Both the position numbers and the translations under genes were made by a program. A stretch of DNA of 63,868 nucleotides, counting the filler, from Octopus bimaculoides (Eukaryota): the NCBI RefSeq assembly GCF_001194135.2. It is 5 parts of 5 records of this genome, joined end to end, with 100 filler letters (N's around TTAATTAATTAA, not from the genome) between each part and the next. Parts side by side here need not be neighbours in the genome. Positions count along the whole stretch, not along the records: positions 1 to 23,899 come from NC_068992.1; 4 more parts are not named here. One strand, 5' to 3'. This document shows, in pieces, positions 224 through 23,064 of this stretch. How positions within the stretch are numbered: position 1 is the first letter of the stretch; every line of letters starts with the position of its first letter. A model generated the notes under the pieces. The model was not told the origin of the DNA. It ran no database searches and was given only the letters and a program-made list of their open reading frames with translations.

Positions 224-340
224 TCAGGCAGTGAAGACATACTTTTGTGTCGGTACACACTGCTTCTTTTTAATACATTTCCACAGCCACTCGGACGTTA
301 TACAGACAGCTGAAGGCGAAGCTGAGCTGACATCACTTTC
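224..340 (-). CDS. LIG3: DNA ligase III, terminal coding exon (BRCT C-terminal half: ESDVSSASPSAVCITSEWLWKCIKKKQCVPTQKYVFTA*)
   Basis: Acceptor ccctcag|GAA, phase 0, TGA at 224-226. ITSEWLWKCIKKK resembles the LIG3 BRCT end (VSPEWIWACIRKR in human, recalled). Confidence 0.88.
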   Translation of the reverse strand, partial: ESDVSSASPSAVCITSEWLWKCIKKKQCVPTQKYVFTA

Positions 341-1249: not shown

Positions 1250-3480
1250 AGATCAGTCTCACATANNNNNNNNNNTCTCATATAGATCATAAACAGAGAG
1301 ATCAGTCTCACATAGATCATAAACAGAGAGATCAATCTCACATAGATCATAAACAGAGAGATCAGTCTTGCATAAATTATAAACAGAGAGATCAGTCTTG
1401 CATAAATTATAAACAGAGAGATCAGTCTCACATAGGTCATAAACAGAGAGATCAGTCTCACATAGACCATAAACAGAGAGATCAATCTCACATAGATCAT
1501 AAACAAAGAGATCAGTCTCGCATAAATTATAAACATAAAATCACATACACATACACACAGTCTATACATACATTAATGCTAATACACAAACACACACATA
1601 CATATATATACACATATTCATACAAACATACACAATAAACAACAAAATGTAACAAATTTTACAAAACTTTAGAAATATAATTTTTAAAAAAAACACCTCC
1701 ATAAACAACACCAAAATGTTGTAAATAAAAAATGTTAAGAACATTTTAGAGAAAGCTGGGAAAAGAAAAGTTTTTAAAATTATCATCATCATTTTAATGT
1801 CCATTTAAATACAAGAGATCAGTCTCACATAGATATCATAAACAGAAAGATCAGTCTTGTANNNNNNNNNNNNNNNNNNNNNNNNNNNNNNNNNNNNNNN
1901 NNNNNNNNNNNNNNNNNNNNNNNNNNNNNNNNNNNNNNNNNNNNNNNNNNNNNNNNNNNNNNNNNNNNNNNNNNNNNNNNNNNNNNNNNNNNNNNNNNNN
2001 NNNNNNNNNNNNNNNNNNNNNNNNNNNNNNNNNNNNNNNNNNNNNNNNNNNNNNNNNNNNNNNNNNNNNNNNNNNNNNNNNNNNNNNNNNNNNNNNNNNN
2101 NNNNNNNNNNNNNNNNNNNNNNNNNNNNNNNNNNNNNNNNNNNNNNNNNNNNNNNNNNNNNNNNNNNNNNNNNNNNNNNNNNNNNNNNNNNNNNNNNNNN
2201 NNNNNNNNNNNNNNNNNNNNNNNNNNNNNNNNNNNNNNNNNNNNNNNNNNNNNNNNNNNNNNNNNNNNNNNNNNNNNNNNNNNNNNNNNNNNNNNNNNNN
2301 NNNNNNNNNNNNNNNNNNNNNNNNNNNNNNNNNNNNNNNNNNNNNNNNNNNNNNNNNNNNNNNNNNNNNNNNNNNNNNNNNNNNNNNNNNNNNNNNNNNN
2401 NNNNNNNNNNNNNNNNNNNNNNNNNNNNNNNNNNNNNNNNNNNNNNNNNNNNNNNNNNNNNNNNNNNNNNNNNNNNNNNNNNNNNNNNNNNNNNNTCTCA
2501 CATAGATCATAAACAGAGAGATCAGTCTCACATAGATCATAAACAAAGAGATCAGTCTCACATAGATCATAAACAGAGAGATCAGTCTCATATAGATCAT
2601 AAACAGAGAGATCAGTCTCACATAGATCATAAACAGAGAGATCAGTCTCACATAGATCATAAATAGAGAGATCAGTCTCACATAGATCATAAACAGAGAG
2701 ATCAGTCTTGCATAAATTATAAACAGAGAGATCAGTCTCACATAGGTCATAAACAGAGAGATCAGTCTCACATAGATTATAAACAGAGAGATCAATCTCA
2801 CATAGACCATAAACAGAGAGATCAATCTCACATAGATCATAAACAAAGAGATCAGTCTCGCATAAATTATAAACAGAGAGATCAGTCTCGCATGGATTAT
2901 AAACAGAGAGATCAATCTCACATAGACCATAAACAGAGAAATCAATCTCACATAGATCATGAACAAAGAGATCAGTCTCGCATAAATCATAAACAGAGAG
3001 ATCAGTCTCACATAGATCATAAACAGAGAGATCAGTTTCACGTAGATCATAAACAGAGAGATCAGTCTCGCATGGATTATAAACAGAGAGATCAGTCTCA
3101 CATAGGTCATAAACAGAGAGATCAGTCTCACATAGATTATAGAAAGATCAGTCTTGCATAAATTATAAACAAAGAGATTGGTCTCACATAGATCATAAAC
3201 AGGGTGATGAGTCTTACATAGATCGTAAAAAGGGAGATTGGTCTCACATAGGTCATAAACAAAGAGATCAGTCTTATATAGATCATAAACAGGGTGATCA
3301 GTCTTACATAGATCATAAACAGGGTGATCAGTCTTACATAGAAATTATTAATGGAGGAGAAGCACTACACCATCAACATTAGTGTTACATAGATCATAAA
3401 CAGAGAGACTTGTCTTACATAAACAGAGAGATCAATCTTACATAGATCAGAAGCAAAGAGATCAGTCTTACATAGAGATC
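1250..3480. repeat. 30-bp minisatellite array (AGAGAGATCAGTCTCACATAGATCATAAAC)n, partly in N gaps
   Basis: Near-identical 30-nt units at 1276-1530 and 2496-3140, decaying towards 3480. Explains the spurious ...RLISLFM... and ...SHIDHKQRDQ... ORFs. Confidence 0.95.
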
Positions 3481-4355: not shown

Positions 4356-4428
4356 ATTGAGATCTTTGACAATGACAAGGTGGGTGGCGTTGGAGACGTC
4401 ATGTTCCAGCAATACTTCTCCATCGAAA
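4356..4428 (-). CDS. LIG3: DNA ligase III BRCT exon ((A)FDGEVLLEHDVSNATHLVIVKDLN)
   Basis: Matches human AFDGDLVQEFDMTSATHVL (recalled). Preceded by a U12 branch site TTCCTTAAT and an AC 3' splice site; ends AAT|GTAGGT. 73 nt (1+72). Confidence 0.88.
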
Positions 4429-4971
4429 GTGCGATTAATTAAGGAAAACAATTAGAGAAACACAGACAACTAGAATTGAATACAAGTAACAATGGCACAA
4501 AATATTTATTTATTTATAATAATACGCAGAAATATGGTTGTTTGGTTTGCAATGTTCACTTTGAAGCAAAGGGGTTTTAGGTTCAATTCTACAGTGTAAC
4601 ACTGAGCATGTGTCTTCTACTATTGTCTCAAGTTAGCCAATACTTTGTGAGGGAAATTGGGTGGATGGAAACTGTATGGAAGCCCAATGGGTGTGTTTCT
4701 ATCTCAGTGTGCATATGTCTGTCTGTGTGTGTGTACATGCATTTGTGTGTACAATCATTTTCAGTCAACAAATATGGACTGAGGCATTTTCTATGACCAA
4801 GTTTCCTTCCTCATGCCAGCCCTCAAGTGTTTCCAAGCAAGGTAATATTCCTCTATAGCTAGACAGTTTTTCACAAAAAATTCCAAATGAAGGACATTGC
4901 ACTTGTTTACAAGTAACAGATGATATCAGGAAGATACAAACACACACAACCACATGCATGTATACATACAA

Positions 4972-5005
<34 letters not shown>

Positions 5006-5319
5006 TTCCTACTTCATGTAGATATACTGTAAAAACACCTTAATACTGCAGTATTCATTTTGAGAAAGCATTTCATATAGACATTTAGTGTTCTAAAGTA
5101 CAGAAGCATCAGTGGTAGATAAAAAGTGCCTTGCACTGGCAGTGGAGCTGCTAAATCACATGATTTCTGTGAGTTTGTGCATCATCAGCAGCAGGTATCT
5201 ACTAATACCACATGCAAGCCAAACTTCCACTTCTCCTGATATAGAAAAACTGACTAATCAGTCAATGGCACTGCAAATAGCTGGAAGGTTTGACAAAAGT
5301 TAGTTATCAGCAACAGAAG

Positions 5320-5460
5320 TACTATGGCTATACCCTACAGTTATATATACGAGAAGTTTAAAAGTGGCCAGACAGGCGTGACGCACAAAGAGGGAGTTAA
5401 GACGCCCGTCAACCTCCACCACTGACGAGAAGATTCAACAAGCTAGAGAGATAGTAATGG
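5320..5460 (+). mobile_element. Mariner transposase fragment
   Basis: Frameshifted KFKSGQT...RPSTSTTDEKIQQAREIVM, typical of the mariner HTH linker region. Confidence 0.55.
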
Positions 5461-6723
5461 TGAACTAGTTTACCATCACCATCTCTTGGAACATTGCTCT
5501 GTGTTCTTCTTTGATGGACATTACTAGTGGAATGGCCATGCTTACTGTAAATCCAGAAAGAAAAATGGCGCAATCAAGCTCAAACTTCAATCATGTGACC
5601 ACAATAGTACCAACTATAAGCACACATGCACAGAAGGCAGTGTGACAATAATAAAGATATGTTATGGCGAAAGTGCAAATAATTTTTGACTTCCCTTCAT
5701 ATATATATATATATATGAAGGGAATATATATATATATATAGGCGATGGCTTCTTGGAGCTAATTCACGGCAGCTTTCGTCCTAATTTTGGGACTGCCATG
5801 TTGGCTTGGCGATAACTATTAATTTCCAGTACCGCTGCCGTAGTCTCCTTTAGAGAGACTTAGAAATATTAATAACTCTATTTCTGAAAACCAGTGNNNN
5901 NNNNNNNNNNNNNNNNNNNNNNNNNNNNNNNNNNNNNNNNNNNNNNNNNNNNNNNNNNNNNNNNNNNNNNNNNNNNNNNNNNNNNNNNNNNNNNNNNNNN
6001 NNNNNNNNNNNNNNNNNNNNNNNNNNNNNNNNNNNNNNNNNNNNNNNNNNNNNNNNNNNNNNNNNNNNNNNNNNNNNNNNNNNNNNNNNNNNNNNNNNNN
6101 NNNNNNNNNNNNNNNNNNNNNNNNNNNNNNNNNNNNNNNNNNNNNNNNNNNNNNNNNNNNNNNNNNNNNNNNNNNNNNNNNNNNNNNNNNNNNNNNNNNN
6201 NNNNNNNNNNNNNNNNNNNNNNNNNNNNNNNNNNNNNNNNNNNNNNNNNNNNNNNNNNNNNNNNNNNNNNNNNNNNNNNNNNNNNNNNNNNNNNNNNNNN
6301 NNNNNNNNNNNNNNNNNNNNNNNNNNNNNNNNNNNNNNNNNNNNNNNNNNNNNNNNNNNNNNNNNNNNNNNNNNNNNNNNNNNNNNNNNNNNNNNNNNNN
6401 NNNNNNNNNNNNNNNNNNNNNNNNNNNNNNNNNNNNNNNNNNNNNNNNNNNNNNNNNNNNNNNNNNNNNNNNNNNNNNNNNNNNNNNNNNNNNNNNNNNN
6501 NNNNNNNNNNNNNNNNNNNNNNNNNNNNNNNNNNNNNNNNNNNNNNNNNNNNNNNNNNNNNNNNNNNNNNNNNNNNNNNNNNNNNNNNNNNNNNNNNNNN
6601 NNNNNNNNNNNNNNNNNNNNNNNNNNNNNNNNNNNNNNNNNNNNNNNNNNNNNNNNNNNNNNNNNNNNNNNNNNNNNNNNNNNNNNNNNNNNNNNNNNNN
6701 NNNNNNNNNNNNNNNNNNNNNNN

Positions 6724-7733
6724 GTGCCATTCAGTAACAACTTTAGCTGTGTGAATTGGTGCATTATCATCCTGAAAGATTGAGTTTCCGTCTGGAAGCA
6801 GTTCCACAACCATAGGATGAATTTGATCAGATAAAATGCTTAAATAGTTTTGACTATTAATTCTGCCATGGAGGGAAACCATTGGGCCGATCGGATTTCT
6901 AAGATATAGCCCCACCCCAGATCATCACAGATCCTTCTCCATGTTTAACTGTTGGAAGAAGGCAGTCTGGATCAAATGCTTCTTTTGGCTGTCTCCACAC
7001 ATATACTCAGTCGATGGTCGGAAATAANNNNNNNNNNTTGGCTGTCTCCACACATATACTCAGTCGATGGTCGGAAATAAGGTAAAGGATGACTTGTCCA
7101 AGAAAATAACATTCTTCCACAGCTCTAGGGACTAATCCTGTAGGTTTTTACTCCATTCTAAACGCTTTGCAACATTTGTTTTTGAAAGTAGTGGTTTTCT
7201 GATTGCAGCCCTCCCATGAGATCTGGCTTTGTGCAGCTCCTGGTGAACAGCTTTTGTGGAACATGGGTTCTTGAGGTGGTCATTAAGTTCTGCAGTAAAT
7301 TTAGTAGCTGTACTTTTGTGATCCTTTCTAACAATTCATGTAAGAGTCTGGTGGTCCCTATCTGAAAGTTTTGGTTTTCTTTCGGAGTTCTTTTTTGATG
7401 AGGAGGTTTTTCCCTCTTTCTCAAAGGCTGTCATTACTTTCGAGACAGTATTTCTTGATACACCAAACATTTTGGCTGTTTTTGTTACACTAGCACTTGC
7501 CATATGAGCACCAACAAGGTGACCTCTTTGAAAGTCCAATAGATCTGTCATTTTAATAAATTTTAATTACCTTTTTCTGATGATATTTGAAAAGAAACAG
7601 CAATTTTAGCAAAACATATTAAGCAACACTAATAATAAATTAAAAAACCCCCAAAAAAAACAAGATTTTGACGGTTTTATAGATATTTCAAAACTATGAT
7701 GCTAGGTGTTTCCATTATTTTGTCCAACTCCTG
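6724..7733 (-). mobile_element. Tc1-like DNA transposon copy 1 (decayed; 3' end in gap)
   Basis: TA + 29-bp TIR CAGGAGTTGGACAAAATAATGGAAACACC at 7733-7705. HTH region MTDLLDFQRGHLVG...; catalytic region FQDDNAPIHTAKVVTEWH. Frameshifts present. Confidence 0.9.
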
Positions 7734-8935
7734 TATGTGTATATATATATATATAAACAATATACGAGTATATGCATATATATGTACATGTATGTACATA
7801 CCTTCATCTACATGTACATATAGATACATATCTGGGTGCATGACGTTGCAAAAAAAACATAGACAAAATGATAAACAAGGTACNNNNNNNNNNNNNNNNN
7901 NNNNNNNNNNNNNNNNNNNNNNNNNNNNNNNNNNNNNNNNNNNNNNNNNNNNNNNNNNNNNNNNNNNNNNNNNNNNNNNNNNNNNNNNNNNNNNNNNNNN
8001 NNNNNNNNNNNNNNNNNNNNNNNNNNNNNNNNNNNNNNNNNNNNNNNNNNNNNNNNNNNNNNNNNNNNNNNNNNNNNNNNNNNNNNNNNNNNNNNNNNNN
8101 NNNNNNNNNNNNNNNNNNNNNNNNNNNNNNNNNNNNNNNNNNNNNNNNNNNNNNNNNNNNNNNNNNNNNNNNNNNNNNNNNNNNNNNNNNNNNNNNNNNN
8201 NNNNNNNNNNNNNNNNNNNNNNNNNNNNNNNNNNNNNNNNNNNNNNNNNNNNNNNNNNNNNNNNNNNNNNNNNNNNNNNNNNNNNNNNNNGTATATCATA
8301 TTATATATTGTATATTCCATATTCTATACCCCACATTAGTTCTGCAGGAATATAAATAAAACATAAAAAACAGACAGTGTTGGAACTCTTTTAAGCAAAA
8401 TAATATATTCCTCTATACAAAATCATACAAAAAAACCCATCTTTTTTGTATTTATTTTTACTCGCATATATATATATATAAACAATATACGAGTATATGC
8501 ATATATATGTACATGTATGTACATACCTTCATCTACATGTACATATAGATACATATCTGGGTGCATGACGTTGCAAAAAAAACATAGACAAAATGATAAA
8601 CAAGGTACAAAAACCACACAGGCCACATAGAGAGCATATCCTTCAGCAGCTGCCACCATTAAAACACTGGCGTTTAGCAACTTGAGCATATACAGAGCAA
8701 ACCCTTGTGATGGATTTGGTAGACAGAAACTGAGAGTAATACTTCTAATCAATTCTTTTAAAAACAATGAGTGTGTATGCGAGTGTTCATTTTGCATGTG
8801 CCTATGCAAACACATACATGTATACACTCCTAGATATACATGTGTATACACAGAATTATATATTTATGCATACATATATACATACATGTCCACATATACA
8901 CATATGTGTATATACTTATACTCATATATAGATAT

Positions 8936-8983
<48 letters not shown>

Positions 8984-9635
8984 TAAAACATATATCAATA
9001 AAATCTATTAAACATTTTGAAAAGCAATGTATTTTTCTGAACCAGAATGAAATTCAAAGAGGCTTGTATTTGCATAAATGGTGCTTAGTATTAATTGAAG
9101 GTATTATTTTGGAATATTGCTTAAACAGCAACACAATTTCATAACTTCAATTGTACAGAGTTTATGACGTTTACGAAAATATTAACACAAAAACCTGAAG
9201 TGAAATCAAAAGCCATTTTTGCAGGTGTTGTTCACAAAGGTTTTTAGACAAAAGAACATAAGGATAAGTATTTCCTTGAAACTTACATTTCATATTTCAA
9301 AAAATATTCAGACAATGGGATATAGCCCACATTTTTTATCATAGGTCCTGTTGGATCAGAGTTGACCAGGGGCTAAACAACAGCAACAATAACAGAGTCA
9401 AATTTATTAGATAGCTTCTGTGTAGTCACTGAACCTATTAGAAATAGCAGCTAAATCCTCTCTCCAATAGAGAAGAGCACATTAAACAATGTCTTGGCAA
9501 ACATATATTTAAAAAAAACAAGATGGCCCACAGTTGGGACACTTTTGATTACAGGTCCTGCAGGATCAGGGCTGACCAAGGACTAAACAACAACAACAAT
9601 AACAAACATCTAACATTGTAACCATAAAAGGATAT

Positions 9636-9727
9636 GCAATAATGAATCGCTTCAGTTTCTTGTAGGATTCCATATTTTTAGGAAGGTAAATCTTCAGGTT
9701 ATGGAACACATTGGGCAGTGGATCTGA
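9636..9727 (-). CDS. LIG3: DNA ligase III BRCT N-terminal exon (SDPLPNVFHNLKIYLPKNMESYKKLKRFIIA)
   Basis: Acceptor cccttcag|TCA, phase 0. Aligns to human [28 protein letters not shown] (recalled). Ends at a U12 AT donor in phase 2. Confidence 0.9.
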
Positions 9728-9809
9728 CTGAAGGGGTATGAAAAAGAAAGGTCATTAATTAATCATGTAATCATTGTGCTATTAGTATCTATGTAATCAC
9801 TAATTAGTT

Positions 9810-10015
9810 TCAAATTTTGGCACAAAGCCAGCAATTTTGGGGGAGGAGATAAGTCTTTTACATTGACCCCTGTGTTCAAATGGTCCTTACTTTATTGACC
9901 CCAAAAGGATGAAAGGCAAAATCAACCTCAGCAGAACTCAGAATGTTAAGACAGACGAAATGCTGCGAAGCATTTTGCCTGTCGTGCAAGCAATTCTACC
10001 AGCTTGCCGCCTTGT
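9810..10015 (+). mobile_element. Abundant (TAA)n-tailed SINE family, representative copy
   Basis: The motif gaccccgaaaggatgaaaggcaaagtcgacc...gaatttgaactc recurs at about 18270, 30155, 33940, 36535, 44970 and 55510. Confidence 0.75.
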
Positions 10016-10127
10016 AATGACTAATTAACCATCATCATCATCATTTCACGTCTGTTTTCTATGCTGGCGTGGGTTGGATGGTGAGGTGATGGTAGCGACA
10101 TATCAAAAACCCACCAGCCGTGGAGAT

Positions 10128-10643
10128 CAGTGGTTTTCAACCTTTTTAATCATCATCATCATCATCATTTAATGTTCGCTCTCCATGCTGGCAGGAGTTG
10201 GATGGTTTGACAAGCTTTTTAGGTGCCACTGGCACAGGTGTCTTTATGCAACACCAGCACAAGTGCTTCTTAAGTGGCACCGGCACCTGAAAGGACAAGC
10301 CTGCATATGTGGAGGCAGCGATTTTACTTAGTTTGACGTGTCTTATCAAATACAACAAATCACCACATCTCCTGGGCCTTTGTCATTTCCTCAGTGAGAC
10401 CCAACATCCAAAGATCCTTTCTCACCACTTCATCCCTACATCATCCTCGGTCTACCTCTTCCAGATACACAAGGGTCAAATCCAAAACCAGGATCTTTTT
10501 AAAGGGGCCACACCAAAAAAAGTAAAACACAAGTCAATTAAAGAAAACCTTATTATATTTATAGAGGGGAGACCACTAAGGGGCCACCCAAAGGATGCTT
10601 GAGGGCCACATGCAGCCCTGGGAGCCACGGTTGAGAATCCTTG
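10128..10643. mobile_element. hAT-like MITE with nested SINE/LINE fragments
   Basis: Imperfect TIRs cagtggttttcaacc (10128-10142) and ggttgagaatccttg (10629-10643) around a (CAT)n-tailed insert. Confidence 0.45.
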
Positions 10644-10729
10644 ATATAGACTCTCAAGACACATCCATTTTAATGAACATGAAATGGAAGAGAACAATAA
10701 GAACAACCTACTCATGGCAACCATCTAAC

Positions 10730-11190
10730 CACTAATTAGCTATACAATTACTAATTAACTATGTGATTACTAATTAACTATATAATTACTAATTAAATAT
10801 GCAATCACTAATTAACCATGTATTCAGTAATTAACTATGTAATCAATAATTGACCATGAAATCACTGATTGACCAAATAATTACTAATTAATCACAACAG
10901 CAATAATTAGCAAAGCAATCATGAATTAATCAAATAGTCACTAACTGACAAAGTAATCATTGATGTAATAACTATGTAATCACTAAGTAAGAAAACAATC
11001 TTTACTTAACAAATTAATTATCAATTAACAATGCATTCCCTAATAACCATGCAATGCATAATTAACAACGTAATCATTAATTTAGTATAATTATGAATTA
11101 ACCCTGCAATTCCTAATTAACCATGTAATTATTAATTAACATGGTTAATTAACATGGTTAATTAACATGGTTAATTAACCATGTTAACTG
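10730..11190. repeat. Degenerate ~20-bp AT-rich tandem repeat ending in a 14-bp tandem and a 26-bp perfect palindrome
   Basis: Recurrent taattactaattaaccatg-like units; TTAACATGGTTAATTAACCATGTTAA at 11162-11187. Confidence 0.75.
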
Positions 11191-11344
11191 ATGATTTTTG
11201 GCATAAACATAAGCCTGCAGAATATTAAAACCATTTTTCTGGGCAGAATTGTATGGGTAATCTAAAGCTACAAATTTTTAACTTCACTAGGATTTGAATT
11301 CGTTGATCTGGGGATTAAACAGTAAAACAAGAAATATTTTATAC

Positions 11345-11455
11345 CACAGAAGCACTGGCAGAACCACTGGACGATGTAGAATGGTCAAAAGCTTCCAAAT
11401 GTTGAGGATTCTTTTGGTAACAACCACTGCCATATTTACACATTGGTTTCTTCTC
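11345..11455 (-). CDS. LIG3: LIG3 exon encoding a PBZ zinc finger (EKKPMCKYGSGCYQKNPQHLEAFDHSTSSSGSASASV)
   Basis: Acceptor ttctgcttgcag|GAG, donor GTG|GTATAA. 111 nt, phase 0-0, in frame with both neighbours. C-x5-C-x6-H-x5-H spacing with the YG, CY and NPxH residues of the PBZ consensus. Confidence 0.85.
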
Positions 11456-12890
11456 CTGCAAGCAGAAAATTAATTCAATTTTAACTGAAAAAAAAAATTA
11501 CAAAAAATACAAAAGCATTGTTATTTAGCCCCAGGTCTATGATCACAAGCATTCCTGTCAGGAGTAAGTAGAGTGCTTCTTTTGATGTATCCTTCATTGT
11601 TAAAGACAGCTGGCTTTGATTTGAAAGAGATTCGACAGATATTTTTAGCAGGACAAGCAACCACAAAGAGGTCCTTTTATTGGCTCAAATACAGAAATAT
11701 TGATTTTGTTTTCCAGTCTTGCTAGGGACCTACACTCTTTTGCAATGCCAAGTGCCTTTTGCAGCAGGTGTTCAGAGAGCTTACAACCCATGCTGACACA
11801 TACTTTGATTCCAGCATTGAGTGTTTTTGCTGTTCTAGGCCACAACCAGCAATAGCATGCATAGAGATGTTAACAGAGATATTAAAAATCAAGCACAGGC
11901 ATTGCTTGAAGCTTTTTATAGTGAGAAAAGGTCTTGCACAGGGTCTAATCCTACACTCAAAACAATGAATGCATTTACTCTGAAAAAAAAGAACTAGTCT
12001 AAATCATTGGATGCAACATCACAGGAGTTACATCAGAGTTCCCTTTCTCCTACAGAGATGTCTAAAAAAGATAAGGGGTCTTGTGCTTCTAACTGTAGGA
12101 TGATCTCTAATTCTGAAAAATTTATGTCCTTTGACATGTTTGCTTTTCATCCTGCAGAGTGTCCAACGAAAACAACCTACCATTTTTTTTTTTTAATCAT
12201 TTTTTTTAAATTTAATTTATTAATCCAATTTACATCAAATATTTTTGTTTTCATCGATTACAATAAGTAAAGATTACAAAAAAATTTTTTCAGAAATTGC
12301 ATAAAAAATTGGATTAAGCCGTTTGGCAACTTGGCTGATTTGGGCAAGTTGGTAGGAGGTTAAAAAATAATTATAAAAAGGTCAATAATTAATAAAAAGA
12401 AAAAAAAAAAAAGAAACATCCTTTGCATGCAAGCAAGGCAGTCAAAATCACATACGAAAAGCAGGGTTGATAAAGTTGCCAGTTTAGCCACCAACAATTT
12501 GATGATACAACAGATTGAACTGGGTCACATTTTACCAGTAGCACTAAGAGTGACCCAACATGTGTACACACACACACACACACAGTAAGCCAGTAAAAAG
12601 TCCTTGAAAAATTTTTTAATTTGAATTTTTTAAACTTTGATTCCATTTATAATAGAATTAATCTGTAAAGGACATTTAAAGACCTGATTCATGAATCAAA
12701 ACTGAACAGCTTTCCATAAATGACTTTTATAATAGCAAATTATATTTCAAAGACTTCAGAATTATATCACAGAATGTAAATGAAATGATGGTAGAAATGT
12801 AGAAAATTAACAATCTCAAGAATAGATAGGGAGTAGTCCTGAAAGTATGGCAGCAAGAATAAGAATGATTGTTGAGCAAAGTTCAGAGCT

Positions 12891-13320
12891 ACTTACCCTT
12901 GTTGGTAACAAAGAGCCTCTCCTTCAAAGTGAAAGGCAGATTGTATGATGCCTGTATATGAACAGCTGTGCTACATGGTAGTGAGACATGGTCTGTGACT
13001 GCTGAGGACATGCAAAAGCTTGAAGGAAATGAAGCCAGCATGCTCTGCCAGATGGGTAATGTCTGTGTGCATGTATGGCAGAGTATAAGTGATTTGAGAG
13101 AAAAACTAGGTATTGAAGACATCAGAGGTAGTGTGCAAGAGAGAAGATTGCACTGGTGTAGTCATGTGATGCATATGGATGAAAATAGCTGTATCAAGAA
13201 GTGCTGATCTTGAATTGTGAAGGGAACATGTGGAAGGGTAGACCCAGGTGGACATGGGACCAAGTGGTGAAAAAGGATCTTCAGACATTGTTGCTTACAG
13301 AAGGGATGACAAAGGAGTAA
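12891..13320 (+). mobile_element. RTE-clade LINE, RT C-terminal fragment (decayed)
   Basis: LHGSETWSVTAEDMQKLE...RRLHWCSHVMHM, with stops and frameshifts. Confidence 0.85.
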
Positions 13321-14359
13321 CACTTCTGGTGGTTTGCTATGCTTGGAAGTAGCCATTCACACAGATAAGCATGTCTTCTATGTCCCTCTCTCAGCTGAGA
13401 GATCCTGTTCTTGTGAGCTCACAGATGCTGGGGCTGCATAAAAGCACATGTGCTAGTGCCACATAAAAGCACCTGTGCTGGTGACACATAAAAGCAACAA
13501 TGTTAGTGCCACATAGAAAGCACCCAGTATATTCTGTGAAGTGGTTAGCATTAGGAAGGGCATCCAGCTGTAGAAATCGTTCCAAAGCAAACAAATGGAG
13601 TCTAGGCAACACTTCAGCTGGTCAGCTTCTGTCAAACCATCCAACCTATGCCAGCATGGACAATGAACATTAAATGATGATGATGATGATGATGTCGCCA
13701 GTTCCTTCACCTATCTTTTCACAAGATAATTCTATCTCATAAACAGACAACAGAGATGATGATGATGATGATGACGATACCATCACATAATTATTTCTAA
13801 TTACAGGCATGACTGTCTGGTAAAGAAGTTTGCTTCCCAACCACATGGCTTCAGGTTCAATTTCACTGCATGGCACCTTGAGCAAGTGCCTTCTAAAGAA
13901 ACATTGGGCCAACCAAAACCTTCTGAATGGATTTGACAAGTGGAAACCGAAAGAAGCCCATCATGAGTGCATGTGCATATGTTTGTGTGGCATGTGTATG
14001 TATGTATATGCCTGTGTGAGTGTGCTTGAGTCTCCTTGTCTGGAGACATTACATGGTCATTTTGAATAAGCATCACTGTCATACAAGCAGTGTCATTCAT
14101 TTCCAATATTCTGCAGAAACATGTCTGGTCATGGGGGAAATATTACCTTGTTTGGAAACACGTGAAAGTTGGTGACAGGAAGGGTATGAAGCTGTAGAAA
14201 ATCTGCCTCTGTAATCTCCATCTGACCCAAGCAGATATGGAAATATTCATCATCTGAAAGTCTCCACTTCTTTCTGTCTCCTGTTTTGCATGCATACATA
14301 TATGCATATTTTGTATTTCATACCCAAACTGCTATATTTAATATATCTCATTTGTTTAT

Positions 14360-15792
14360 TTTTCCTTACCTCTGCTGGCGACAAAGGAACTCTCACTCAG
14401 AGTAAAGGGCAGACTGTATGACGCATGTGTACGAACAGTCATGCTACATGGCAGTGAAACATGGGCTGTGACTGCTGAGGACATGCGTAAGCTCGCAAAG
14501 AATGAAGCCCGTATGCTCCGCTGGATGTGTAATGTCAGTGTGCATACCCAACAAAGTGTAAGTATCTTGAGAGAAAAGCTGAACATAAGAAGCATCAGTT
14601 GTGGTGTGCAAGAGAGGCGATTGCGCTGGTATGGACATGTGGTGAGAATGGACGAGGATAGCTACGTGAAAAAGTGCCACACCCTAACAGTTGAGGGAAC
14701 CCGTGGAAGAGGTAGGCCCAGGAAGACCTGGGCTGAGGTGGTGAGGCAAGACCTTCAAACATTGGGCCTCACCGAGGCAATGACTTCTGACCGAGACCTT
14801 TGGAAATGTACTGTGCGTGAGAAGACCCGGCAAGCCAAGTGAGACCTAAATCCAAGGCCTCTGCCAGAGGTGTAGCCAGCCCACTTATGCATACCTTTNN
14901 NNNNNNNNNNNNNNNNNNNNNNNNNNNNNNNNNNNNNNNNNNNNNNNNNNNNNNNNNNNNNNNNNNNNNNNNNNNNNNNNNNNNNNNNNNNNNNNNNNNN
15001 NNNNNNNNNNNNNNNNNNNNNNNNNNNNNNNNNNNNNNNNNNNNNNNNNNNNNNNNNNNNNNNNNNNNNNNNNNNNNNNNNNNNNNNNNNNNNNNNNNNN
15101 NNNNNNNNNNNNNNNNNNNNNNNNNNNNNNNNNNNNNNNNNNNNNNNNNNNNNNNNNNNNNNNNNNNNNNNNNNNNNNNNNNNNNNNNNNNNNNNNNNNN
15201 NNNNNNNNNNNNNNNNNNNNNNNNNNNNNNNNNNNNNNNNNNNNNNNNNNNNNNNNNNNNNNNNNNNNNNNNNNNNNNNNNNNNNNNNNNNNNNNNNNNN
15301 NNNNNNNNNNNNNNNNNNNNNNNNNNNNNNNNNNNNNNNNNNNNNNNNNNNNNNNNNNNNNNNNNNNNNNNNNNNNNNNNNNNNNNNNNNNNNNNNNNNN
15401 NNNNNNNNNNNNNNNNNNNNNNNNNNNNNNNNNNNNNNNNNNNNNNNNNNNNNNNNNNNNNNNNNNNNNNNNNNNNNNNNNNNNNNNNNNNNNNNNNNNN
15501 NNNNNNNNNNNNNNNNNNNNNNNNNNNNNNNNNNNNNNNNNNNNNNNNNNNNNNNNNNNATTTTGAGCGTGGCCATTGCCAGTACCGCCTGACTGGCCTT
15601 CGTGCGGGTGACATGTAAAAGCACCCACTACACTCTCTGAGTGGTTGGCGTTAGGAAGGGCATCTAGCTGTAGAAACTGCCAAATCAGATTGGAGCCTGG
15701 TGTTGCCATCCGGTTTCACCAGTCCTCAGTCAAATCGTCCAACCCATGCTAGCATGGAAAGCGGATGTTAAACGATGATGATGATGATGATG
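14360..15792 (+). mobile_element. 5'-truncated RTE-clade LINE with 3' UTR and (TGA)n tail, spanning a gap
   Basis: ORF 14441-14842 MLHGSETW...RRLRWYGHVVRM...GRPRKTWAEVVRQDL. After the gap the sequence ends in ...gttaaacgatgatgatg. Confidence 0.85.
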
Positions 15793-16249
15793 AATTGCCT
15801 CCATATCTGCTCAACATGATCCCTCTCATAGCCATTCTTTATCCCATGGAATGGATCCCCAGTAAAGACATTGGAGTCTAAATTTGAATGTTTTGTGTGC
15901 TTCTAAGTATCTGGTGACGTCCTGTACCATATATGCATATATAATATATATATATGTCTTCTTTCAGTTTCTGTCCATCAAGGCCACTCAAAAGGTTTCT
16001 GTTGGCCCCTGGCCCCAGGGCCATAGTGGAAGACACTTGCCCAAGGTACCATGTAGTGGGACTGAACCCAAGACCATGTAGTTGGGAAGCAAACTTCTTA
16101 CTACACAGGTATGCCACATCCATAGTCGCAGCTGTCACCTTAATAAAGGAAGGACAGAAGGGCACATTGACTATTGTAGTCCCAGGTGGACGTAAAGAAC
16201 AAAATAATTATGGCTGAAACATCTTTGATCAACATAGTTGCTCTGTCGA

Positions 16250-16420
16250 GGTTAAACAATAACAGCAGCAGCAACAGCAGCAGCAACATCAACAATAACA
16301 GCAGTAGCAGCAACAACAGCAACAAATTCAACAACAGCAGCAAAAACATCAACAATAACAGCAACAACAACAGCAGCAGCAACAAATTCAGCAACAACAG
16401 CAACAAATTCAGCAGCAGCC
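16250..16420. repeat. Compound (CAA/CAG)n trinucleotide repeat just inside the LIG3 intron
   Basis: Direct inspection; starts about 18 nt after the 16437 donor. Confidence 0.9.
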
Positions 16421-16437
16421 TGACAGAATTTTTTTAC

Positions 16438-16740
16438 CTTTGATGTTGAGGATTTTTTGTCCCCTTCCACATTATCAGAACGAGATTTCTGAAACATTTC
16501 ATCAATTTTACGTGCTTTGCTTTTTGAAGATTGCCCTGGTGATTCCTGCTCCTCTTTCATTGGTATTTTCCGCTTGACCGGAGTCTTTTGCAGGGACGAC
16601 TGGCTGTTTTTGTGGTCATCGCTGCTTTGTTCTGCATCTCCTTTGAAGTCATTTTCTTTAGAAGAGTCATCTGCAGGTGATGCCTTCGGAGTAACGAGAT
16701 TTGGAAAGTCGGACACCTCTTTCGATGACTTGTAAAGTTC
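16438..16740 (-). CDS. LIG3: DNA ligase III exon (ELYKSSKE... followed by a low-complexity K/S/D/E linker)
   Basis: Acceptor tttcaaaag|GAA, donor AAG|GTAAAA. 303 nt, phase 0-0. ELYKSSKE continues human ...QLKELYQLSKE (recalled). Confidence 0.88.
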
Positions 16741-19329
16741 CTTTTGAAACAAGCAAAAATAACAGAAAAAGTTAGAATTATAATACAAGAGGGTTAAATA
16801 TATGCAAAAAGCACATGCTCGTGCCACATAAAAAATACCCAGTACATTCCGGAAAGTGGTTGGTGTAGGAAGTGCATCAAGCTATAGACACTTTACCAAA
16901 TCAGACAATTGGAGCCTGGTGCAACTCCCTGGCTTGCCATCTCCTGTCAAACCATCCAACCCATACCAGTATGGCAAATGGACATTAAATGATGAAGAAG
17001 ATAATATACGATGAATTGTTTTCAATTTCCATCTATTTGAGCGCGATTGTTTCCAGCTTCGCCTTACTTGCACTCGTGCCAGTGGCATATGAACAAAACA
17101 CAAAACATTGGACTGACTCCTGTGCAGATGGCACATAAAAAAACACCATTTGAGCGTGGCTGTTGCCAGTACTGCCGGACTGGCCCTCGTGCCAATGGCA
17201 CGTAAAAAGCACCCACAACACTCTCGAAATGGTTGGTGTTAGGAAGGGCATCCAGCTGTAGAAACTCTGCCAAATCAGATTGGAGTCTGGTGTAGCCATC
17301 TGATTCGCCAGTCCCCAGTCAAATCATCCAACCCATGCTAGCATGGAAAGCAGACGTTAAATGAAAATGATGATGATGATGATGATGAAAGCCATTGACA
17401 AGTCTTTTGTCAGCCAGGAGCTTTAGCACAAGACATTTACCAAGATGTTGTGCAATGGGACTGAACCCCAGACAACATTGTTCAGAGTGAGAGAGAAAAG
17501 GCAGTTATCTCTGCTTTCTGTGGTATGAGGTGCAGGCATGGCTGTGTGGTTAAGAAGCTCACTTTGCAGCCATGTGGTTTCAGGTTCAATCCCACTGCAC
17601 AACACCTTGAACAAGGGTTTTCTGCTATAGAACTAAGCCAACAACCGCTTTGTGAATGAATTTAGTGGGTGAAACCCTTGTAGAAGTCCATCATCATTAT
17701 CATCATCATTATTTAACATCCGTTTTCCATGCTGGCATGGATCGGATGATTTGTCCAGAGCTAAGTAAGGCCAGGGGCCACACCAGGCTCCATTGTCTGT
17801 TCAGACATGGTTTCTAAGGTTGGATGCCCTTCCTAATGCCAACCACTCTACAGAGTGCACTGGGTGCTTTTTATATGACACCAGCATCAGTGCTTTTAAC
17901 ATGGCACCAGCATTGGTACCAATTTTGTTGTGACAGACATGTGTGTATGAGTGCCTTTCTGTTTTTGCCCTCCTACCTCCAATATCTCTCGATAGCCGGT
18001 GTTGGTTTGTTCACATCCCTGTAACCCCATAACTTAGCAGTTTGGCAAAAGCGACTGCTACAATAAGTACCATACTTTTAAAAAAAATAAGTATTAGAGT
18101 CAACATAAGTGAATAAAAGGCAAATATAAGTAAAGGACAAATGTAAGAGAATAAAGGGCAAATATGCTCCTCAAAAGTGCACCAGCCTACGATCATTCAG
18201 TCACTTTTTATTTGTTTTAAAAAAAAAATAAAGAGAGGATTGATTTAATAATCTTTACTGTTATAGACACAAAGCCTGAAATTTTGGGAGAAGGGACTAA
18301 TTGAGTATATTAACCCCTTGCTTGAGTAATATTTATTTTATTGGCCCCTAAAAGATGAAAGGCACAGTTGACCTTTGCAGAATTTGAACTCAGAATATAA
18401 AGGCAGATGAAATGCTGCTATGCATTTTGTCTGACATGATAATGATTCTCGCAGCTGACTGCCTTAGAAGGAGGATTAATTTAATAATATACCACAAACA
18501 CTTATTATACCGATTTCATTGATCAACTAAGAGTCATTTTATTGGCCAGCCAAGTATGGTGTCATTGACTAACCAAGTATGATCCTACAGGATAACCAAG
18601 TATGATTTGCTGGTCAAATATAATTTCGTTGACCAGTTAATTAGGATTTCATTAGCTAAATATAATTTCATTGATTAACCAAGTATGGTTTCAATGGGTG
18701 GCCAAGTATCATTTACATTGGTTAGACAATTATAATTTCAGCCATACCTATCATGTCTTTTTGTAATATCAAGGATTATGCTGTCCTTCAGGCAGTTGGG
18801 TCTAATTTGAAGGATATTTTGCTACTATTTCTAGCAAGTTATGTGAGTGCAAAGTATCCAATCACTGTTATTTATATCGTTTTTTAGCCATAGGTCAGCT
18901 CAGAGCAAGAAGACCTATGATCAAAATGTTCCAGATATGATCATCCCATCTTATAATTTTAGATAAGGAATTTCCTTACCTACATTCTACATTCTCTTAT
19001 GTTACCTGTCATTCGATTTTTAAGATGGCAAAGCAGAGATGGAGGGAATTTGACTGCTATGTCTAGTGATTACATACAGGTTCTCCCATTAGTTTATAAA
19101 GCATCCAGTCAGGTTGTAGTTTCCCTGAAGTCATGGATGTTTAAAAAAATCCCACACCTCACTCCTCATTTTTTTTGCTTTCGAGTAACAAGAGAATAAT
19201 GAGTGTTAACAAATGGGACTAAAAGGTATTTTGTTGAAATTCTTTGATGAATATCAAAACATTGCAGGAGCCAAATCAGCATTTTATCATCAGAAGAGGA
19301 GAAGTTGGAAAAAAAGTAAGTTTGCTATC

Positions 19330-19911: not shown

Positions 19912-20276
19912 CTTAAGCCTTGGTAGGTCAGTTGCTTCTTTCCAGCTTTTATCTGTTCGTATTTTGGTGAGACGAGGGAACCTAATGGAAATCCCATCAG
20001 CTGTGTGAATTTCAGCCTTGCTAAATTCTGCTCCGGTGATCTCCCAAACTGGTGCCTGATATGGATCTTCAACAATAAAATCTGGTATGACATTCTTTTT
20101 TATATTTAACCAAGATGGTACTTTCTGAACATCCTTGCTAATTTTTACCATCTTCAGCTCCTTCTGCAAACGGTCTAAGGTTCTGTCATCGAAACCATTA
20201 CCAACTTTGCTAACAGTACACCACTTTTTGGTGAATGGATTGTATACTCCTGTTAAAAACACCGACATAAGTCCAC
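19912..20276 (-). CDS. LIG3: DNA ligase III OB-fold exon (GGLMSVFLTGVYNP...VWEITGAEFSKAEIHTADGISIRFPRLTKIRTDKSWKEATDLPRLK)
   Basis: Contains ligase motif VI SIRFPR and the LIG3-diagnostic VWEITGAEFSK/HTADGISIRFPR. Splice sites ctag|GT and AAG|GTGAGT; 365 nt (2+363). Confidence 0.96.
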
Positions 20277-20876: not shown

Positions 20877-21000
20877 CTTTATTTCCAGTGCCATAGTAAG
20901 CTCCAAGAACAACCAAATCAGCAGAGTCTGCCATACTTCCTTGTTCTAAATAATCTTTTTTCACTTTCAACCAATGTCTCTTGCCTGGTTCATAAATACT
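20877..21000 (-). CDS. LIG3: DNA ligase III exon ([42 protein letters not shown])
   Basis: Ligase motif V (WLKVKKDY) and [10 protein letters not shown]. Splice sites attag|AGT and AAAG|GTATTT; 124 nt. Confidence 0.96.
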
Positions 21001-22986: not shown

Positions 22987-23064
22987 TTTAATATGTTTCA
23001 AAACAAGTCCTTCTAATCCTTCACGAAAGACCTTTGTCATTAAAGACTGGAGATCAGTTGGTTC
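22987..23064 (-). CDS. LIG3: DNA ligase III exon (EPTDLQSLMTKVFREGLEGLVLKHIK)
   Basis: Ligase motif IV EGLVLK. Splice sites ttgttag|GAA and AAA|GTAAGA; 78 nt, phase 0-0. This is the most 5' LIG3 exon found in the window. Confidence 0.93.

What the first reader, a model, noticed from the sequence alone, without database searches (positions are those of the whole stretch)
11345..11455. LIG3 carries a PBZ poly(ADP-ribose)-binding zinc finger on its own symmetric exon between the OB fold and BRCT
Seen: a 111-nt phase 0-0 exon encodes KPMCKYGSGCYQKNPQHLEAFDH, an exact C-x5-C-x6-H-x5-H PBZ pattern. It is absent from the ORF track because it is short. Established: PBZ fingers (APLF, CHFR) bind PAR. 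Human LIG3 has no PBZ and relies on its N-terminal PARP-like finger and XRCC1. PBZ fusions to repair enzymes are known in some invertebrates and protists, so the architecture may have precedent. Inference: this ligase could be recruited to PARylated breaks without XRCC1. The symmetric phase and weakish donor (GTATAA) make it a plausible cassette exon.
Basis: partly seen in the sequence, partly recalled or inferred. Interest (0 to 1): 0.75.

Follow-up and report, generated by a model that had tools for sequence, protein, structure and literature searches.

The report
PBZ zinc-finger exon in LIG3
The 111-base exon is real and gives this invertebrate's DNA ligase III a poly(ADP-ribose)-binding zinc finger, but corals, Hydra, starfish, sea cucumbers, clams and roundworms have the same arrangement in public protein records, so it is an old animal design that vertebrates lost.

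Summary
On the minus strand, 11455..11345 is a 111-nt, phase 0-0 exon (cag|GAG...GTG|gtataa). It encodes EKKPMCKYGSGCYQKNPQHLEAFDH..., which scores 47.7 bits against Pfam PBZ (cut-off 22.7) and E 2e-13 against both solved APLF PBZ fingers. It joins in frame to a LIG3 linker exon (16740..16438) and the first BRCT exon (9727..9636). The eight exons in the piece give a 420-aa peptide ending in a stop.

It is not unusual. LIG3 proteins with a PBZ at the same place are on record for Desmophyllum, Porites, Hydra, Acanthaster, Apostichopus, Tegillarca and Ascaris/Oesophagostomum. In the coral and the starfish the PBZ also sits on its own phase 0-0 exon, so the exon predates the cnidarian-bilaterian split. 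Fish and frog LIG3 lack it.

- **PAR binding:** likely but untested. All zinc ligands and both tyrosines are present, but the APLF R387 position is Q.
- **Recruitment without XRCC1:** not supported here, because the LIG3 BRCT is kept. Nematode LIG3s that keep the PBZ but lack a BRCT show the idea can hold elsewhere.
- **Cassette exon:** no support. The donor is no weaker than others in the gene, and every relative's sequence covering the region includes the PBZ.

Verdict: a new member of a known kind, of modest interest.

The parts
11345..11455 (-). PBZ exon: 111 nt, phase 0-0. It encodes EKKPMCKYGSGCYQKNPQHLEAFDH followed by a Ser-rich tail. Acceptor ttctgcttgcag|, donor GTG|gtataa.
   Evidence: PF10283, 47.7 bits; APLF PBZ, E 2e-13; unique in the piece; 0.029 expected by chance; AF2 model, residues 1-20 pLDDT 84-90; only PDB fold hit is APLF 2kuo, rmsd 1.0 over 25 columns; phase.
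16438..16740 (-). Linker exon: 303 nt, phase 0-0. It encodes ELYKSSKEV...KKSSTSK, a low-complexity Ser/Lys/Glu-rich stretch. Donor AAG|gtaaaa.
   Evidence: Homologous linker exon in a relative, L001 14475-14738. ELYK/LFK-SKE motif shared with other LIG3s.
19912..20276 (-). Exon for the OB-fold domain up to its C-terminal end (GGLMSVF...ISIRFPRLTKIRTDKSWKEATDLPRLK). Donor AAG|gtgagt.
   Evidence: (DNA_ligase_A_C, 51.8 bits).
20877..21000 (-). Exon encoding [41 protein letters not shown] (end of the adenylation domain, start of the OB fold).
22987..23064 (-). Exon encoding ...TKVFREGLEGLVLKHIK (ligase EGLVLK motif). Exons further upstream are not in the model; the gene is cut by the piece edge.
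9636..9727 (-). First BRCT exon (SDPLPNVFHNLKIYLPKNMESYKKLKRFIIA). Acceptor ccttcag|. It ends at a U12-type AT-AC donor, GC|ATATCCTTTT.
   Evidence: (LIG3_BRCT, 53.2 bits).
4429..9635 (-). U12-type (minor spliceosome) AT-AC intron inside the BRCT coding region. 5' ATATCCTTTT, branch site TTCCTTAAT about 10 nt before the 3' ...CGCAC|. It contains three N gaps and a Tc1/mariner remnant.
   Evidence: Splicing it restores ...IIA|FDGEV, matching Tegillarca YIIAFDGDL. The coral has a U12-type GT-AG intron at the same codon position.
4356..4428 (-). Second BRCT exon (FDGEVLLEHDVSNATHLVIVKDLN). Donor AAT|gtaggt.
224..340 (-). Last exon (ESDVSSASPSAVCITSEWLWKCIKKKQCVPTQKYVFTA, then TGA stop); end of the BRCT.
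   Evidence: W-x-W-x-C-I-K-K motif aligned with other LIG3 BRCTs.

Best explanation
This is a genuine, most likely constitutive, coding exon of the DNA ligase III gene of an invertebrate. Its best named match is a bivalve mollusc. It places one PBZ zinc finger in the disordered linker between the OB fold and the C-terminal BRCT.

The arrangement is the ancestral animal LIG3 architecture: catalytic core, linker, PBZ on its own phase 0-0 exon, then BRCT. An N-terminal zf-PARP finger is shown in the starfish and beside the coral gene, but could not be checked here. Cnidarians, echinoderms, molluscs and nematodes keep the PBZ, and vertebrates have lost it.

Most likely mechanism (inferred): PARP activation at a strand break makes poly(ADP-ribose). 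The PBZ binds adjacent ADP-ribose units through its zinc-held loop and the two conserved tyrosines, and so tethers the ligase at the lesion. Because the BRCT is retained, this direct contact probably adds to an XRCC1-type partnership rather than replacing it.

Shown: the exon, its domain family, its position and its conservation. Inferred: zinc binding, PAR binding and recruitment.
For: - **Domain identity:** Pfam PBZ 47.7 bits against a 22.7 cut-off. Both APLF PBZ fingers match at E 2e-13. The AF2 model's only PDB fold match is APLF 2kuo, rmsd 1.0 Å over 25 columns. C, Y, G, C, H, H are invariant and the second Tyr nearly so across 12 LIG3 PBZs and the two APLF fingers.
- **Gene context:** an in-frame eight-exon model of 420 aa with a stop. 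Pfam order is ligase core, PBZ, LIG3_BRCT. It is 54% identical over 415 residues to Tegillarca granosa LIG3, which has KPMCKYGSSCYQTNPEHLAKFDH at the same place.
- **Same architecture elsewhere:** Desmophyllum, Porites, Hydra, Acanthaster (zf-PARP + core + PBZ + BRCT), Apostichopus, Tegillarca and Ascaris.
- **Ancient exon:** the coral PBZ exon is L002 11817..11894, 78 nt, phase 0-0. The starfish exon is L003 22377..22496, 120 nt, phase 0-0.
- **Inclusion in mRNA of relatives:** uninterrupted ORFs running linker-PBZ-BRCT on 1-3 kb Logan contigs (P0121, P0270, P0002, P0003, P0271). These look like spliced transcripts.
- **What PBZ does (literature):** it binds two consecutive ADP-ribose units and recruits APLF and CHFR (PMC4756826). 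A PBZ fused to Dictyostelium Ku70 is needed for its chromatin enrichment and for NHEJ (PMC3153639, PMC5087659).
Against: - There is no expression or junction data for this species, and its own LIG3 protein was not found in either protein collection.
- The residue equivalent to APLF R387, said to coordinate the PAR phosphates (PMC6264785), is Gln here (CYQKNP). The first motif is CKY rather than C(M/P)Y.
- A single PBZ binds far more weakly than APLF's tandem pair (PMC6264785, citing the APLF structural work).
- Human SNM1A shows that a PBZ-like finger can lack PAR-binding residues (PMC4756826).
- An N gap (14899..15559) lies in the intron upstream of the PBZ exon and could hide a further small exon.
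- In the one related genomic contig obtained (L001), the 5.8 kb held downstream of the linker exon contains no PBZ exon. The locus simply ends there, so this says nothing either way.
Confidence: 0.75

Rival explanations
1. Regulated cassette exon: the PBZ exon is skipped in some tissues or compartments, giving PAR-responsive and PAR-blind LIG3 isoforms.
For: Skipping keeps the frame and gives a 383-aa product with an intact BRCT. The exon is symmetric in three phyla. The donor lacks G at +5.
Against: Two other donors in the same gene also lack +5G (gtattt, gtaaaa), so the donor is not distinctive. Every sequence from relatives that spans the region includes the PBZ. The Acanthaster cluster holds one protein sequence under four RefSeq accessions, all with the PBZ, and no PBZ-less member appears in the Tegillarca, P0003 or P0067 clusters. 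Symmetry is ancestral rather than a recent adaptation.
Confidence: 0.15
2. XRCC1-independent recruitment: the PBZ replaces XRCC1 as the link between this ligase and PAR.
For: Nematode LIG3s (Ascaris F1KSS3, Oesophagostomum, P0090) end directly after the PBZ and have no BRCT. In that lineage the PBZ is therefore the only C-terminal recruitment module.
Against: This gene keeps a complete LIG3-type BRCT (53.2 bits). So do the coral, Hydra, starfish, sea cucumber and clam proteins that carry the PBZ. Whether this species has XRCC1 cannot be seen from the window.
Confidence: 0.15
3. Structural relic: the finger folds and binds zinc but no longer reads PAR, as proposed for human SNM1A. It might serve another ligand or act only as a spacer.
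For: R387-equivalent is Q, and the CKY/CYQ motifs differ from the APLF CMY/CPY and CYR motifs (PMC6264785). There is one finger only. SNM1A is a precedent (PMC4756826).
Against: The Q is conserved in mollusc, echinoderm and anthozoan LIG3 fingers, while both tyrosines, the Gly, K-N-P and all four ligands are kept over more than 600 My. This points to selection on a binding surface. CHFR works with a single PBZ (PMC4756826).
Confidence: 0.2
4. Chance ORF or pseudo-exon in an intron, not part of the mRNA.
For: It is short, sits in AT-rich repeat-laden introns, and there is no expression data.
Against: Chance expectation is 0.029 for the bare spacing and 0/1000 with the aromatic positions. Pfam E is 1.5e-12. 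It has canonical splice sites and the right phase. It lies outside all repeat families found in 9000-18000. Position and exon structure match orthologues in the coral and the starfish.
Confidence: 0.02

Closest known systems
PBZ-bearing DNA ligase III of other invertebrates: Acanthaster planci XP_022085530.1, Tegillarca granosa KAJ8320539.1, Desmophyllum pertusum 'DNA ligase 3', Hydra vulgaris XP_065679626.1, Apostichopus japonicus PIK55364.1
   Same: Same gene family and same domain order (OB fold, acidic/Ser-rich linker, single PBZ, LIG3-type BRCT). Same finger signature CKYG..CYQ..(P).H...[FY].H; Hydra differs, with CQYG..CYR. In the coral and the starfish the PBZ is on its own phase 0-0 exon.
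   Different: Species and linker sequence. Here the exon (111 nt) also carries a Ser-rich tail and is followed directly by the BRCT exon, whereas the coral and the starfish have one more small linker exon. The starfish has lost the U12 intron in the BRCT.
Human APLF tandem PBZ fingers (PDB 2kqb, 2kuo) and the CHFR PBZ
   Same: C-x5-C-x6-H-x5-H, Tyr after Cys1+1, Gly, Tyr after Cys2, K-N-P, [F/Y]-x-H. About 50% identity. The expected function is reading PAR at DNA damage (PMC4756826).
   Different: One finger, not two. Gln replaces APLF R387. The host protein is a ligase rather than a scaffold or histone chaperone (APLF) or an E3 ligase (CHFR).
Vertebrate LIG3-alpha
   Same: Orthologous catalytic core, linker and BRCT. 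45-47% identity to frog and fish over about 409 residues.
   Different: No PBZ. In the fish Channa the linker has two short exons without a finger, and the whole BRCT is one terminal exon with no U12 intron. PAR-dependent recruitment goes through XRCC1 (established knowledge).
Nematode LIG3 (Ascaris suum F1KSS3, Oesophagostomum dentatum)
   Same: PBZ after the OB-fold linker, with the canonical CYRKN motif.
   Different: The protein ends just after the finger. There is no BRCT.
LIG3 with a macrodomain: the Dictyostelium LIG3 orthologue (Gunn et al. 2016, PMC5087659) and the environmental LIG3-like proteins P0093, P0113, P0115, P0194
   Same: An ADP-ribose reader module fused to LIG3. In P0093 and P0113 it sits in the same slot between the OB fold and the BRCT.
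   Different: A different reader fold: macro, about 120 aa, rather than a 25-aa zinc finger.
PBZ fused to other repair enzymes: Dictyostelium Ku70, and the bdelloid rotifer ligase called LigE or LigK in two papers
   Same: The same theme of attaching a PBZ to a repair enzyme through a disordered, Ser/Thr/Pro-rich region (PMC3153639, PMC10665377, PMC6264785).
   Different: Unrelated host proteins. The rotifer ligase was acquired horizontally and is not LIG3.

Membership tests
PBZ zinc finger (Pfam PF10283, zf-CCHH) | Four zinc ligands spaced C-x5-C-x6-H-x5-H | tested here: met
   CKYGSGC-YQKNPQ-H-LEAFD-H. The ligands are invariant in the alignment with 11 other LIG3 PBZs and APLF F1/F2.
PBZ zinc finger (Pfam PF10283, zf-CCHH) | Profile score above the curated Pfam gathering threshold | tested here: met
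   47.7 bits for the exon alone and 42.4 bits in the spliced peptide, against a 22.7 cut-off.
PBZ zinc finger (Pfam PF10283, zf-CCHH) | Aromatic and Gly positions of the consensus: C-x-[F/Y]-G, Tyr after Cys2, [F/Y]-x-H (adenine-stacking Y381/Y386 equivalents) | tested here: met
   C-K-Y-G, C-Y and F-D-H are all present. Consensus from PMC4756826; residue roles from PMC6264785.
PBZ zinc finger (Pfam PF10283, zf-CCHH) | Two basic residues after Cys2-x ([K/R][K/R]; APLF R387-K388) | tested here: inconclusive
   Here it is Q-K: the first position is not basic, the second is. The same Q is found in the clam, starfish, sea cucumber and anthozoan LIG3 fingers; Hydra and nematodes have R.
PBZ zinc finger (Pfam PF10283, zf-CCHH) | PBZ fold | tested here: met
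   AF2 model: residues 1-20 have pLDDT 84-90. The only PDB match is APLF 2kuo, rmsd 1.0 Å over 25 columns, 52% identity. The Foldseek E of 0.8 is not significant for so small a domain, so this is supportive only.
PBZ zinc finger (Pfam PF10283, zf-CCHH) | Binds zinc and poly(ADP-ribose) | not testable with these tools
   Needs a biochemical assay.
DNA ligase III (LIG3) | ATP-dependent ligase adenylation domain followed by the OB-fold domain | tested here: met
   DNA_ligase_A_M (C-terminal end only, 35.9 bits) and DNA_ligase_A_C (51.8 bits). The rest of the core lies beyond the piece edge.
DNA ligase III (LIG3) | C-terminal LIG3-type BRCT (PF16759) | tested here: met
   53.2 bits against a cut-off of 27 on a peptide that covers only part of the domain. 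The full BRCT, through WLWKCIKKK and the stop, is present in the model.
DNA ligase III (LIG3) | Closest relatives are LIG3, not LIG1 or LIG4 | tested here: met
   Nearly all named hits are called DNA ligase 3 or an equivalent; the rest carry generic names. 54% identity to clam LIG3 and 45-47% to frog and fish LIG3 over about 410 aa.
DNA ligase III (LIG3) | N-terminal PARP-like zinc finger (PF00645) | not testable with these tools
   The 5' part of the gene is outside the piece. The finger is present in starfish PBZ-LIG3 (76.4 bits) and in the gene model just upstream in the coral.
Alternatively spliced cassette exon | Length a multiple of three, so skipping keeps the frame | tested here: met
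   111 nt. The skipped product is 383 aa with an intact BRCT.
Alternatively spliced cassette exon | Both inclusion and exclusion isoforms observed | not testable with these tools
   No RNA data for this species. In relatives only inclusion forms were seen.
U12-type (minor) intron, for the intron 9635..4429 | 5' /RTATCCTT, branch site TCCTTRAY 8-18 nt upstream of the 3' site, AT-AC or GT-AG termini (consensus recalled from established knowledge) | tested here: met
   GC|ATATCCTTTT ... TTCCTTAATTAATCGCAC|T. There is no usable AG acceptor for the conserved FDGE frame. The coral orthologue has GC|GTATCCTTTGAC ... CTTTCTTAAC ... tgtag| at the same codon.

The most novel reading that the evidence does not exclude
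PBZ was part of LIG3 before cnidarians and bilaterians split, and gives the ligase its own direct PAR-dependent route to strand breaks. Lineages then diverged. Nematodes kept only the PBZ and dropped the BRCT. Vertebrates kept only the BRCT and handed PAR reading to XRCC1. Some lineages put a macrodomain in the same slot. This gene would then be a natural two-handle intermediate in which the division of labour between direct PAR reading and XRCC1 can be dissected.
Probability: 0.45. Interest if true: 0.5.

Novelty: new member of a known kind. Interest (0 to 1): 0.3.

Why it matters
In vertebrates LIG3 reaches PARylated breaks only indirectly, through XRCC1. The comparison here suggests that this dependence is derived. 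The older animal LIG3 carried its own PAR reader on a dedicated exon, and different lineages kept different handles: PBZ plus BRCT, PBZ alone, BRCT alone, or macro plus BRCT.

That gives a natural experiment for asking how much of LIG3 recruitment needs XRCC1. For genome annotation, it is a reminder that a 111-nt exon and a neighbouring AT-AC intron are easy for gene predictors to miss. The architecture is already in public protein records, so the finding extends a pattern rather than opening a new one.

Tried and rejected
- **Own-species protein search.** I searched the word-indexed protein collection with linker+PBZ+BRCT (231 aa) to find transcripts from this species that would prove exon inclusion. 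There were no hits at E<=0.001. The species' own LIG3 appears in neither collection.
- **Closest genomic relative.** I fetched L001 (OB exon 83% identical) to look for an orthologous PBZ exon. The linker exon is there, but the locus ends 5.8 kb downstream without a PBZ exon, so this is uninformative.
- **Structure of the spliced C-terminus.** Only the 37-aa exon could be modelled.
- **Literature.** Ahel et al. 2008 (Nature 451:81) and the APLF and CHFR PBZ structure papers are not held. I could not check whether LIG3 was already listed among PBZ proteins there. No held paper discusses PBZ in LIG3.
- **Hydra locus.** Not on record.
- **Other features at the exon.** Rfam and tRNA scans of the piece found nothing. 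The exon lies in no repeat family. The plus-strand ORF over the exon (11294..11473) is just its antisense and was not pursued.
- **Taxa of the macrodomain LIG3s** and of P0228, P0125 and P0130: no source names are available.
- **Weak-donor argument for a cassette exon.** Rejected. gtataa is in line with the gtattt and gtaaaa donors of constitutive exons in this gene.
- **Organism.** Not identified beyond mollusc-like. I ran no further search on this because it would not change the verdict.

Full report

Yes. On the minus strand, 11455..11345 reads ctgcttgcag|GAG AAG AAA CCA ATG TGT AAA TAT GGC AGT GGT TGT TAC CAA AAG AAT CCT CAA CAT TTG GAA GCT TTT GAC CAT ... GCT TCT GTG|gtataa. This is 111 nt, or 37 codons: EKKPMCKYGSGCYQKNPQHLEAFDHSTSSSGSASASV.

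- The C-x5-C-x6-H-x5-H spacing occurs exactly once in the six frames of the piece.
- Shuffled sequence gives 0.029 such matches per window. It gives none in 1000 shuffles once the F/Y-G and F/Y-x-H positions are required.
- The exon alone scores 47.7 bits (E 1.5e-12) on Pfam PF10283 'PBZ domain', whose curated cut-off is 22.7.
- A sequence search of all PDB chains returns only APLF (2kqb, 2kuo; E 2e-13). The exon aligns to both of its PBZ fingers.
- An AlphaFold model of the exon, built with nine LIG3 homologues as the alignment, is confident over residues 1-20 (pLDDT 84-90). Its only PDB fold match is APLF 2kuo: rmsd 1.0 Å over 25 columns, 52% identity. The Foldseek E of 0.8 is not significant for so small a domain, so this is supportive only.

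**2. What gene is it in?**

The minus strand of the piece carries the 3' half of a DNA ligase III gene. I rebuilt eight exons with their splice sites:

| Exon (minus strand) | Content |
|---|---|
| 23064..22987 | ...EGLEGLVLKHIK |
| 21000..20877 | [10 protein letters not shown]...GTGNK |
| 20276..19912 | OB fold, ending PRLK |
| 16740..16438 | linker, 303 nt |
| 11455..11345 | PBZ, 111 nt |
| 9727..9636 | BRCT start |
| 4428..4356 | BRCT middle |
| 340..224 | BRCT end and TGA stop |

Joined, they give an open 1263-nt reading frame of 420 aa plus a stop. The PBZ exon enters and leaves in phase 0.

The spliced peptide hits DNA_ligase_A_M, DNA_ligase_A_C, zf-CCHH and LIG3_BRCT in that order. Nearly all its named homologues are called DNA ligase 3. 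The best named full-length match is the blood clam Tegillarca granosa, 54% identical over 415 residues. A gastropod fragment is 61% identical over the catalytic part. The source is therefore probably a mollusc, but I could not name it.

**3. Is the architecture unusual?**

No. Precomputed Pfam annotation of the first homology search already shows PF10283 in nine LIG3 clusters. An exhaustive HMMER search with the PBZ-BRCT region found more. Source names and a fresh Pfam scan give this picture:

| Lineage | Species or record | Domains found |
|---|---|---|
| Starfish | Acanthaster planci XP_022085530.1 | zf-PARP, DBD, adenylation, OB, PBZ, LIG3_BRCT |
| Hydrozoan | Hydra vulgaris XP_065679626.1 | DBD, core, PBZ, BRCT |
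| Clam | Tegillarca granosa KAJ8320539.1 | core, PBZ, BRCT |
| Sea cucumber | Apostichopus japonicus PIK55364.1 | PBZ before the BRCT |
| Corals | Desmophyllum pertusum, Porites lutea | PBZ before the BRCT |
| Nematodes | Ascaris suum F1KSS3, Oesophagostomum dentatum | PBZ at the very C-terminus, no BRCT |
| Vertebrates | frog and fish LIG3 | no PBZ |
| Sponge, bryozoan, spider | Geodia, Bugula, Nephila | no PBZ |

Among 61 retrieved sequences that span both the OB end and the BRCT start, 12 carry a PBZ in the linker. This set includes redundant cluster members.

A further set of LIG3-like proteins of unknown taxon carries a macrodomain. In P0093 and P0113 it sits in the same slot between the OB fold and the BRCT. 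This echoes the published note that the Dictyostelium LIG3 orthologue has a macrodomain (PMC5087659, PMC8529158).

**4. How old is the exon?**

- In the coral locus the PBZ is on its own exon, L002 11817..11894: cag|TCG AAG CCA GCT TGC ... CCG CAA|gtaagt, 78 nt, phase 0-0.
- In the starfish it is L003 22377..22496: cag|GGT AAG CCG GCT TGC ... AGC AAG|gttagt, 120 nt, phase 0-0. The preceding exon ends in phase 0.
- In all three genomes the upstream intron lies four or five codons before the first Cys.

The separate, symmetric exon is therefore inherited from before the cnidarian-bilaterian split. It is not a local peculiarity.

**5. Is it in the mRNA, and is it a cassette?**

There is no expression data for this species, and its LIG3 is in neither protein collection. 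Indirect evidence favours inclusion. Relatives have uninterrupted ORFs running linker-PBZ-BRCT on 1-3 kb assembled contigs, which look like spliced transcripts. These include the clam-like P0121 and P0270.

Skipping would keep the frame, so a cassette is possible. The two arguments offered for it are weak:

- The symmetry is ancestral.
- The donor GTG|gtataa is no poorer than AAG|gtattt and AAG|gtaaaa in the same gene.

No PBZ-less variant turned up in the 90% clusters I examined.

**6. How does it most likely work?**

PBZ fingers bind two adjacent ADP-ribose units of PAR and bring APLF and CHFR to damage sites (PMC4756826). A PBZ fused to Dictyostelium Ku70 is required for its chromatin retention and for NHEJ (PMC3153639).

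Here the finger sits in a Ser/Lys/Glu-rich linker, about 100 residues after the OB fold and about 14 residues before the BRCT. It looks like a tethered reader module. It keeps all four zinc ligands, the Gly, both tyrosines equivalent to APLF Y381 and Y386, and K-N-P.

The one notable departure is Gln at the APLF R387 position, which is reported to contact the phosphates (PMC6264785). That Gln is shared by the clam, starfish, sea cucumber and anthozoan LIG3 fingers, while Hydra and nematodes have Arg. This looks like a conserved LIG3 variant rather than decay.

I therefore think the finger most likely binds PAR, probably more weakly than APLF's tandem pair. It would add a direct PAR contact to whatever the retained BRCT contributes. 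These steps are inferred, not shown.

The BRCT-less nematode proteins show that a PBZ-only solution exists elsewhere.

**7. Comparison with the known, and novelty**

The feature belongs to the PBZ family and the gene to LIG3 (see the membership table). PBZ-LIG3 proteins are already in RefSeq, GenBank and UniProt for several phyla.

I found no paper in the held library that discusses them. I could not read Ahel et al. 2008, which may list them. My vague recollection that it shows PBZ fusions to several repair enzymes is unverified memory.

I rate this as a new member of a known kind. It is a correct, well-spotted exon in a gene whose architecture has ample precedent. The broader pattern is a modestly interesting evolutionary point that would make XRCC1 dependence of LIG3 testable: an ancestral PBZ, vertebrate loss, nematode BRCT loss and macrodomain substitution.

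**8. Seen in passing**

- The intron after 9636 is a textbook U12-type AT-AC intron: GC|ATATCCTTTT ... TTCCTTAAT-N9-AC|T. Only this splice restores ...RFIIA|FDGEV..., matching clam YIIAFDGDL.
- The coral has a U12-type GT-AG intron at the identical codon position. An environmental ORF (P0140) reads through the same ATATCC donor. The starfish and the fish have lost the intron.
- The introns are full of SINE-like copies with (CAT)n tails. They also hold a 19-nt minisatellite and a Tc1/mariner remnant.
- N gaps interrupt several introns.

Noticed in passing
window 4429..9635, minus strand: U12-type AT-AC intron inside the BRCT coding region: donor GC|ATATCCTTTT at 9635, branch site TTCCTTAAT, acceptor CGCAC| at 4429. 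An ORF reading runs through it as 'IIAYPFMVT'; the true junction gives IIA|FDGEV. The coral has a U12-type GT-AG intron at the same codon (L002 about 12820..13124). The starfish (L003) and fish (L004) lack the intron. No held paper links LIG3 to minor introns.
   Followed up: partly
P0275 (Ascaris suum F1KSS3), P0076 (Oesophagostomum dentatum), P0090: Nematode LIG3 proteins end two to six residues after the PBZ finger, or at its last His in P0090, and have no BRCT domain. This is a PBZ-only C-terminus.
   Followed up: partly
P0093 cluster (11 members), P0113, P0115, P0194: LIG3-like proteins from environmental assemblies carry a Macro domain (PF01661). In P0093 and P0113 it lies between the OB fold and the BRCT, the slot the PBZ occupies here. 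P0115 and P0194 are fragments that show only part of this. Taxon unknown.
   Followed up: partly
P0125, P0130: Non-ligase proteins of 560-605 aa with two PBZ fingers followed by a LIG3-type BRCT (PF16759, 44.8 bits for P0125). Identity and taxon unknown.
   Followed up: no
window 16243..16428, minus strand just 3' of the linker exon donor: A CAG/CAA-rich repeat follows the gtaaaa donor and keeps the frame open. The mechanical ORF (16252..16827, 191 aa) therefore runs well past the true exon end at 16438.
   Followed up: no
window 10025..17900, several places: A SINE-like repeat family in both orientations, ending in (CAT)n/(ATG)n runs (D5-D9, I1-I12), and a 19-nt minisatellite at 10681..11140. 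None overlaps the PBZ exon.
   Followed up: no
window about 6843..7566, minus strand: Remnant of a Tc1/mariner-type transposase (HTH_Tnp_Tc3_2, 43.6 bits), broken by frameshifts and N gaps, inside the U12 intron. Two reverse-transcriptase-like tail ORFs (12968..13207 and 14441..14842, plus strand) form the two copies of a 300-nt repeat (75% identity; D4); the one tested (14441..14842) had no Pfam hit.
   Followed up: partly
window 14899..15559, and other N runs at 1862..2495, 5897..6723, 7884..8290: Assembly gaps. The one at 14899..15559 lies in the intron between the linker and PBZ exons, so a small extra exon cannot be excluded.
   Followed up: no
L004 (Channa striata LIG3) 7333..9370: In the fish the linker is split into three exons with no zinc finger (the second is 81 nt; the third's end was not mapped). 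The whole BRCT is one terminal exon.
   Followed up: no
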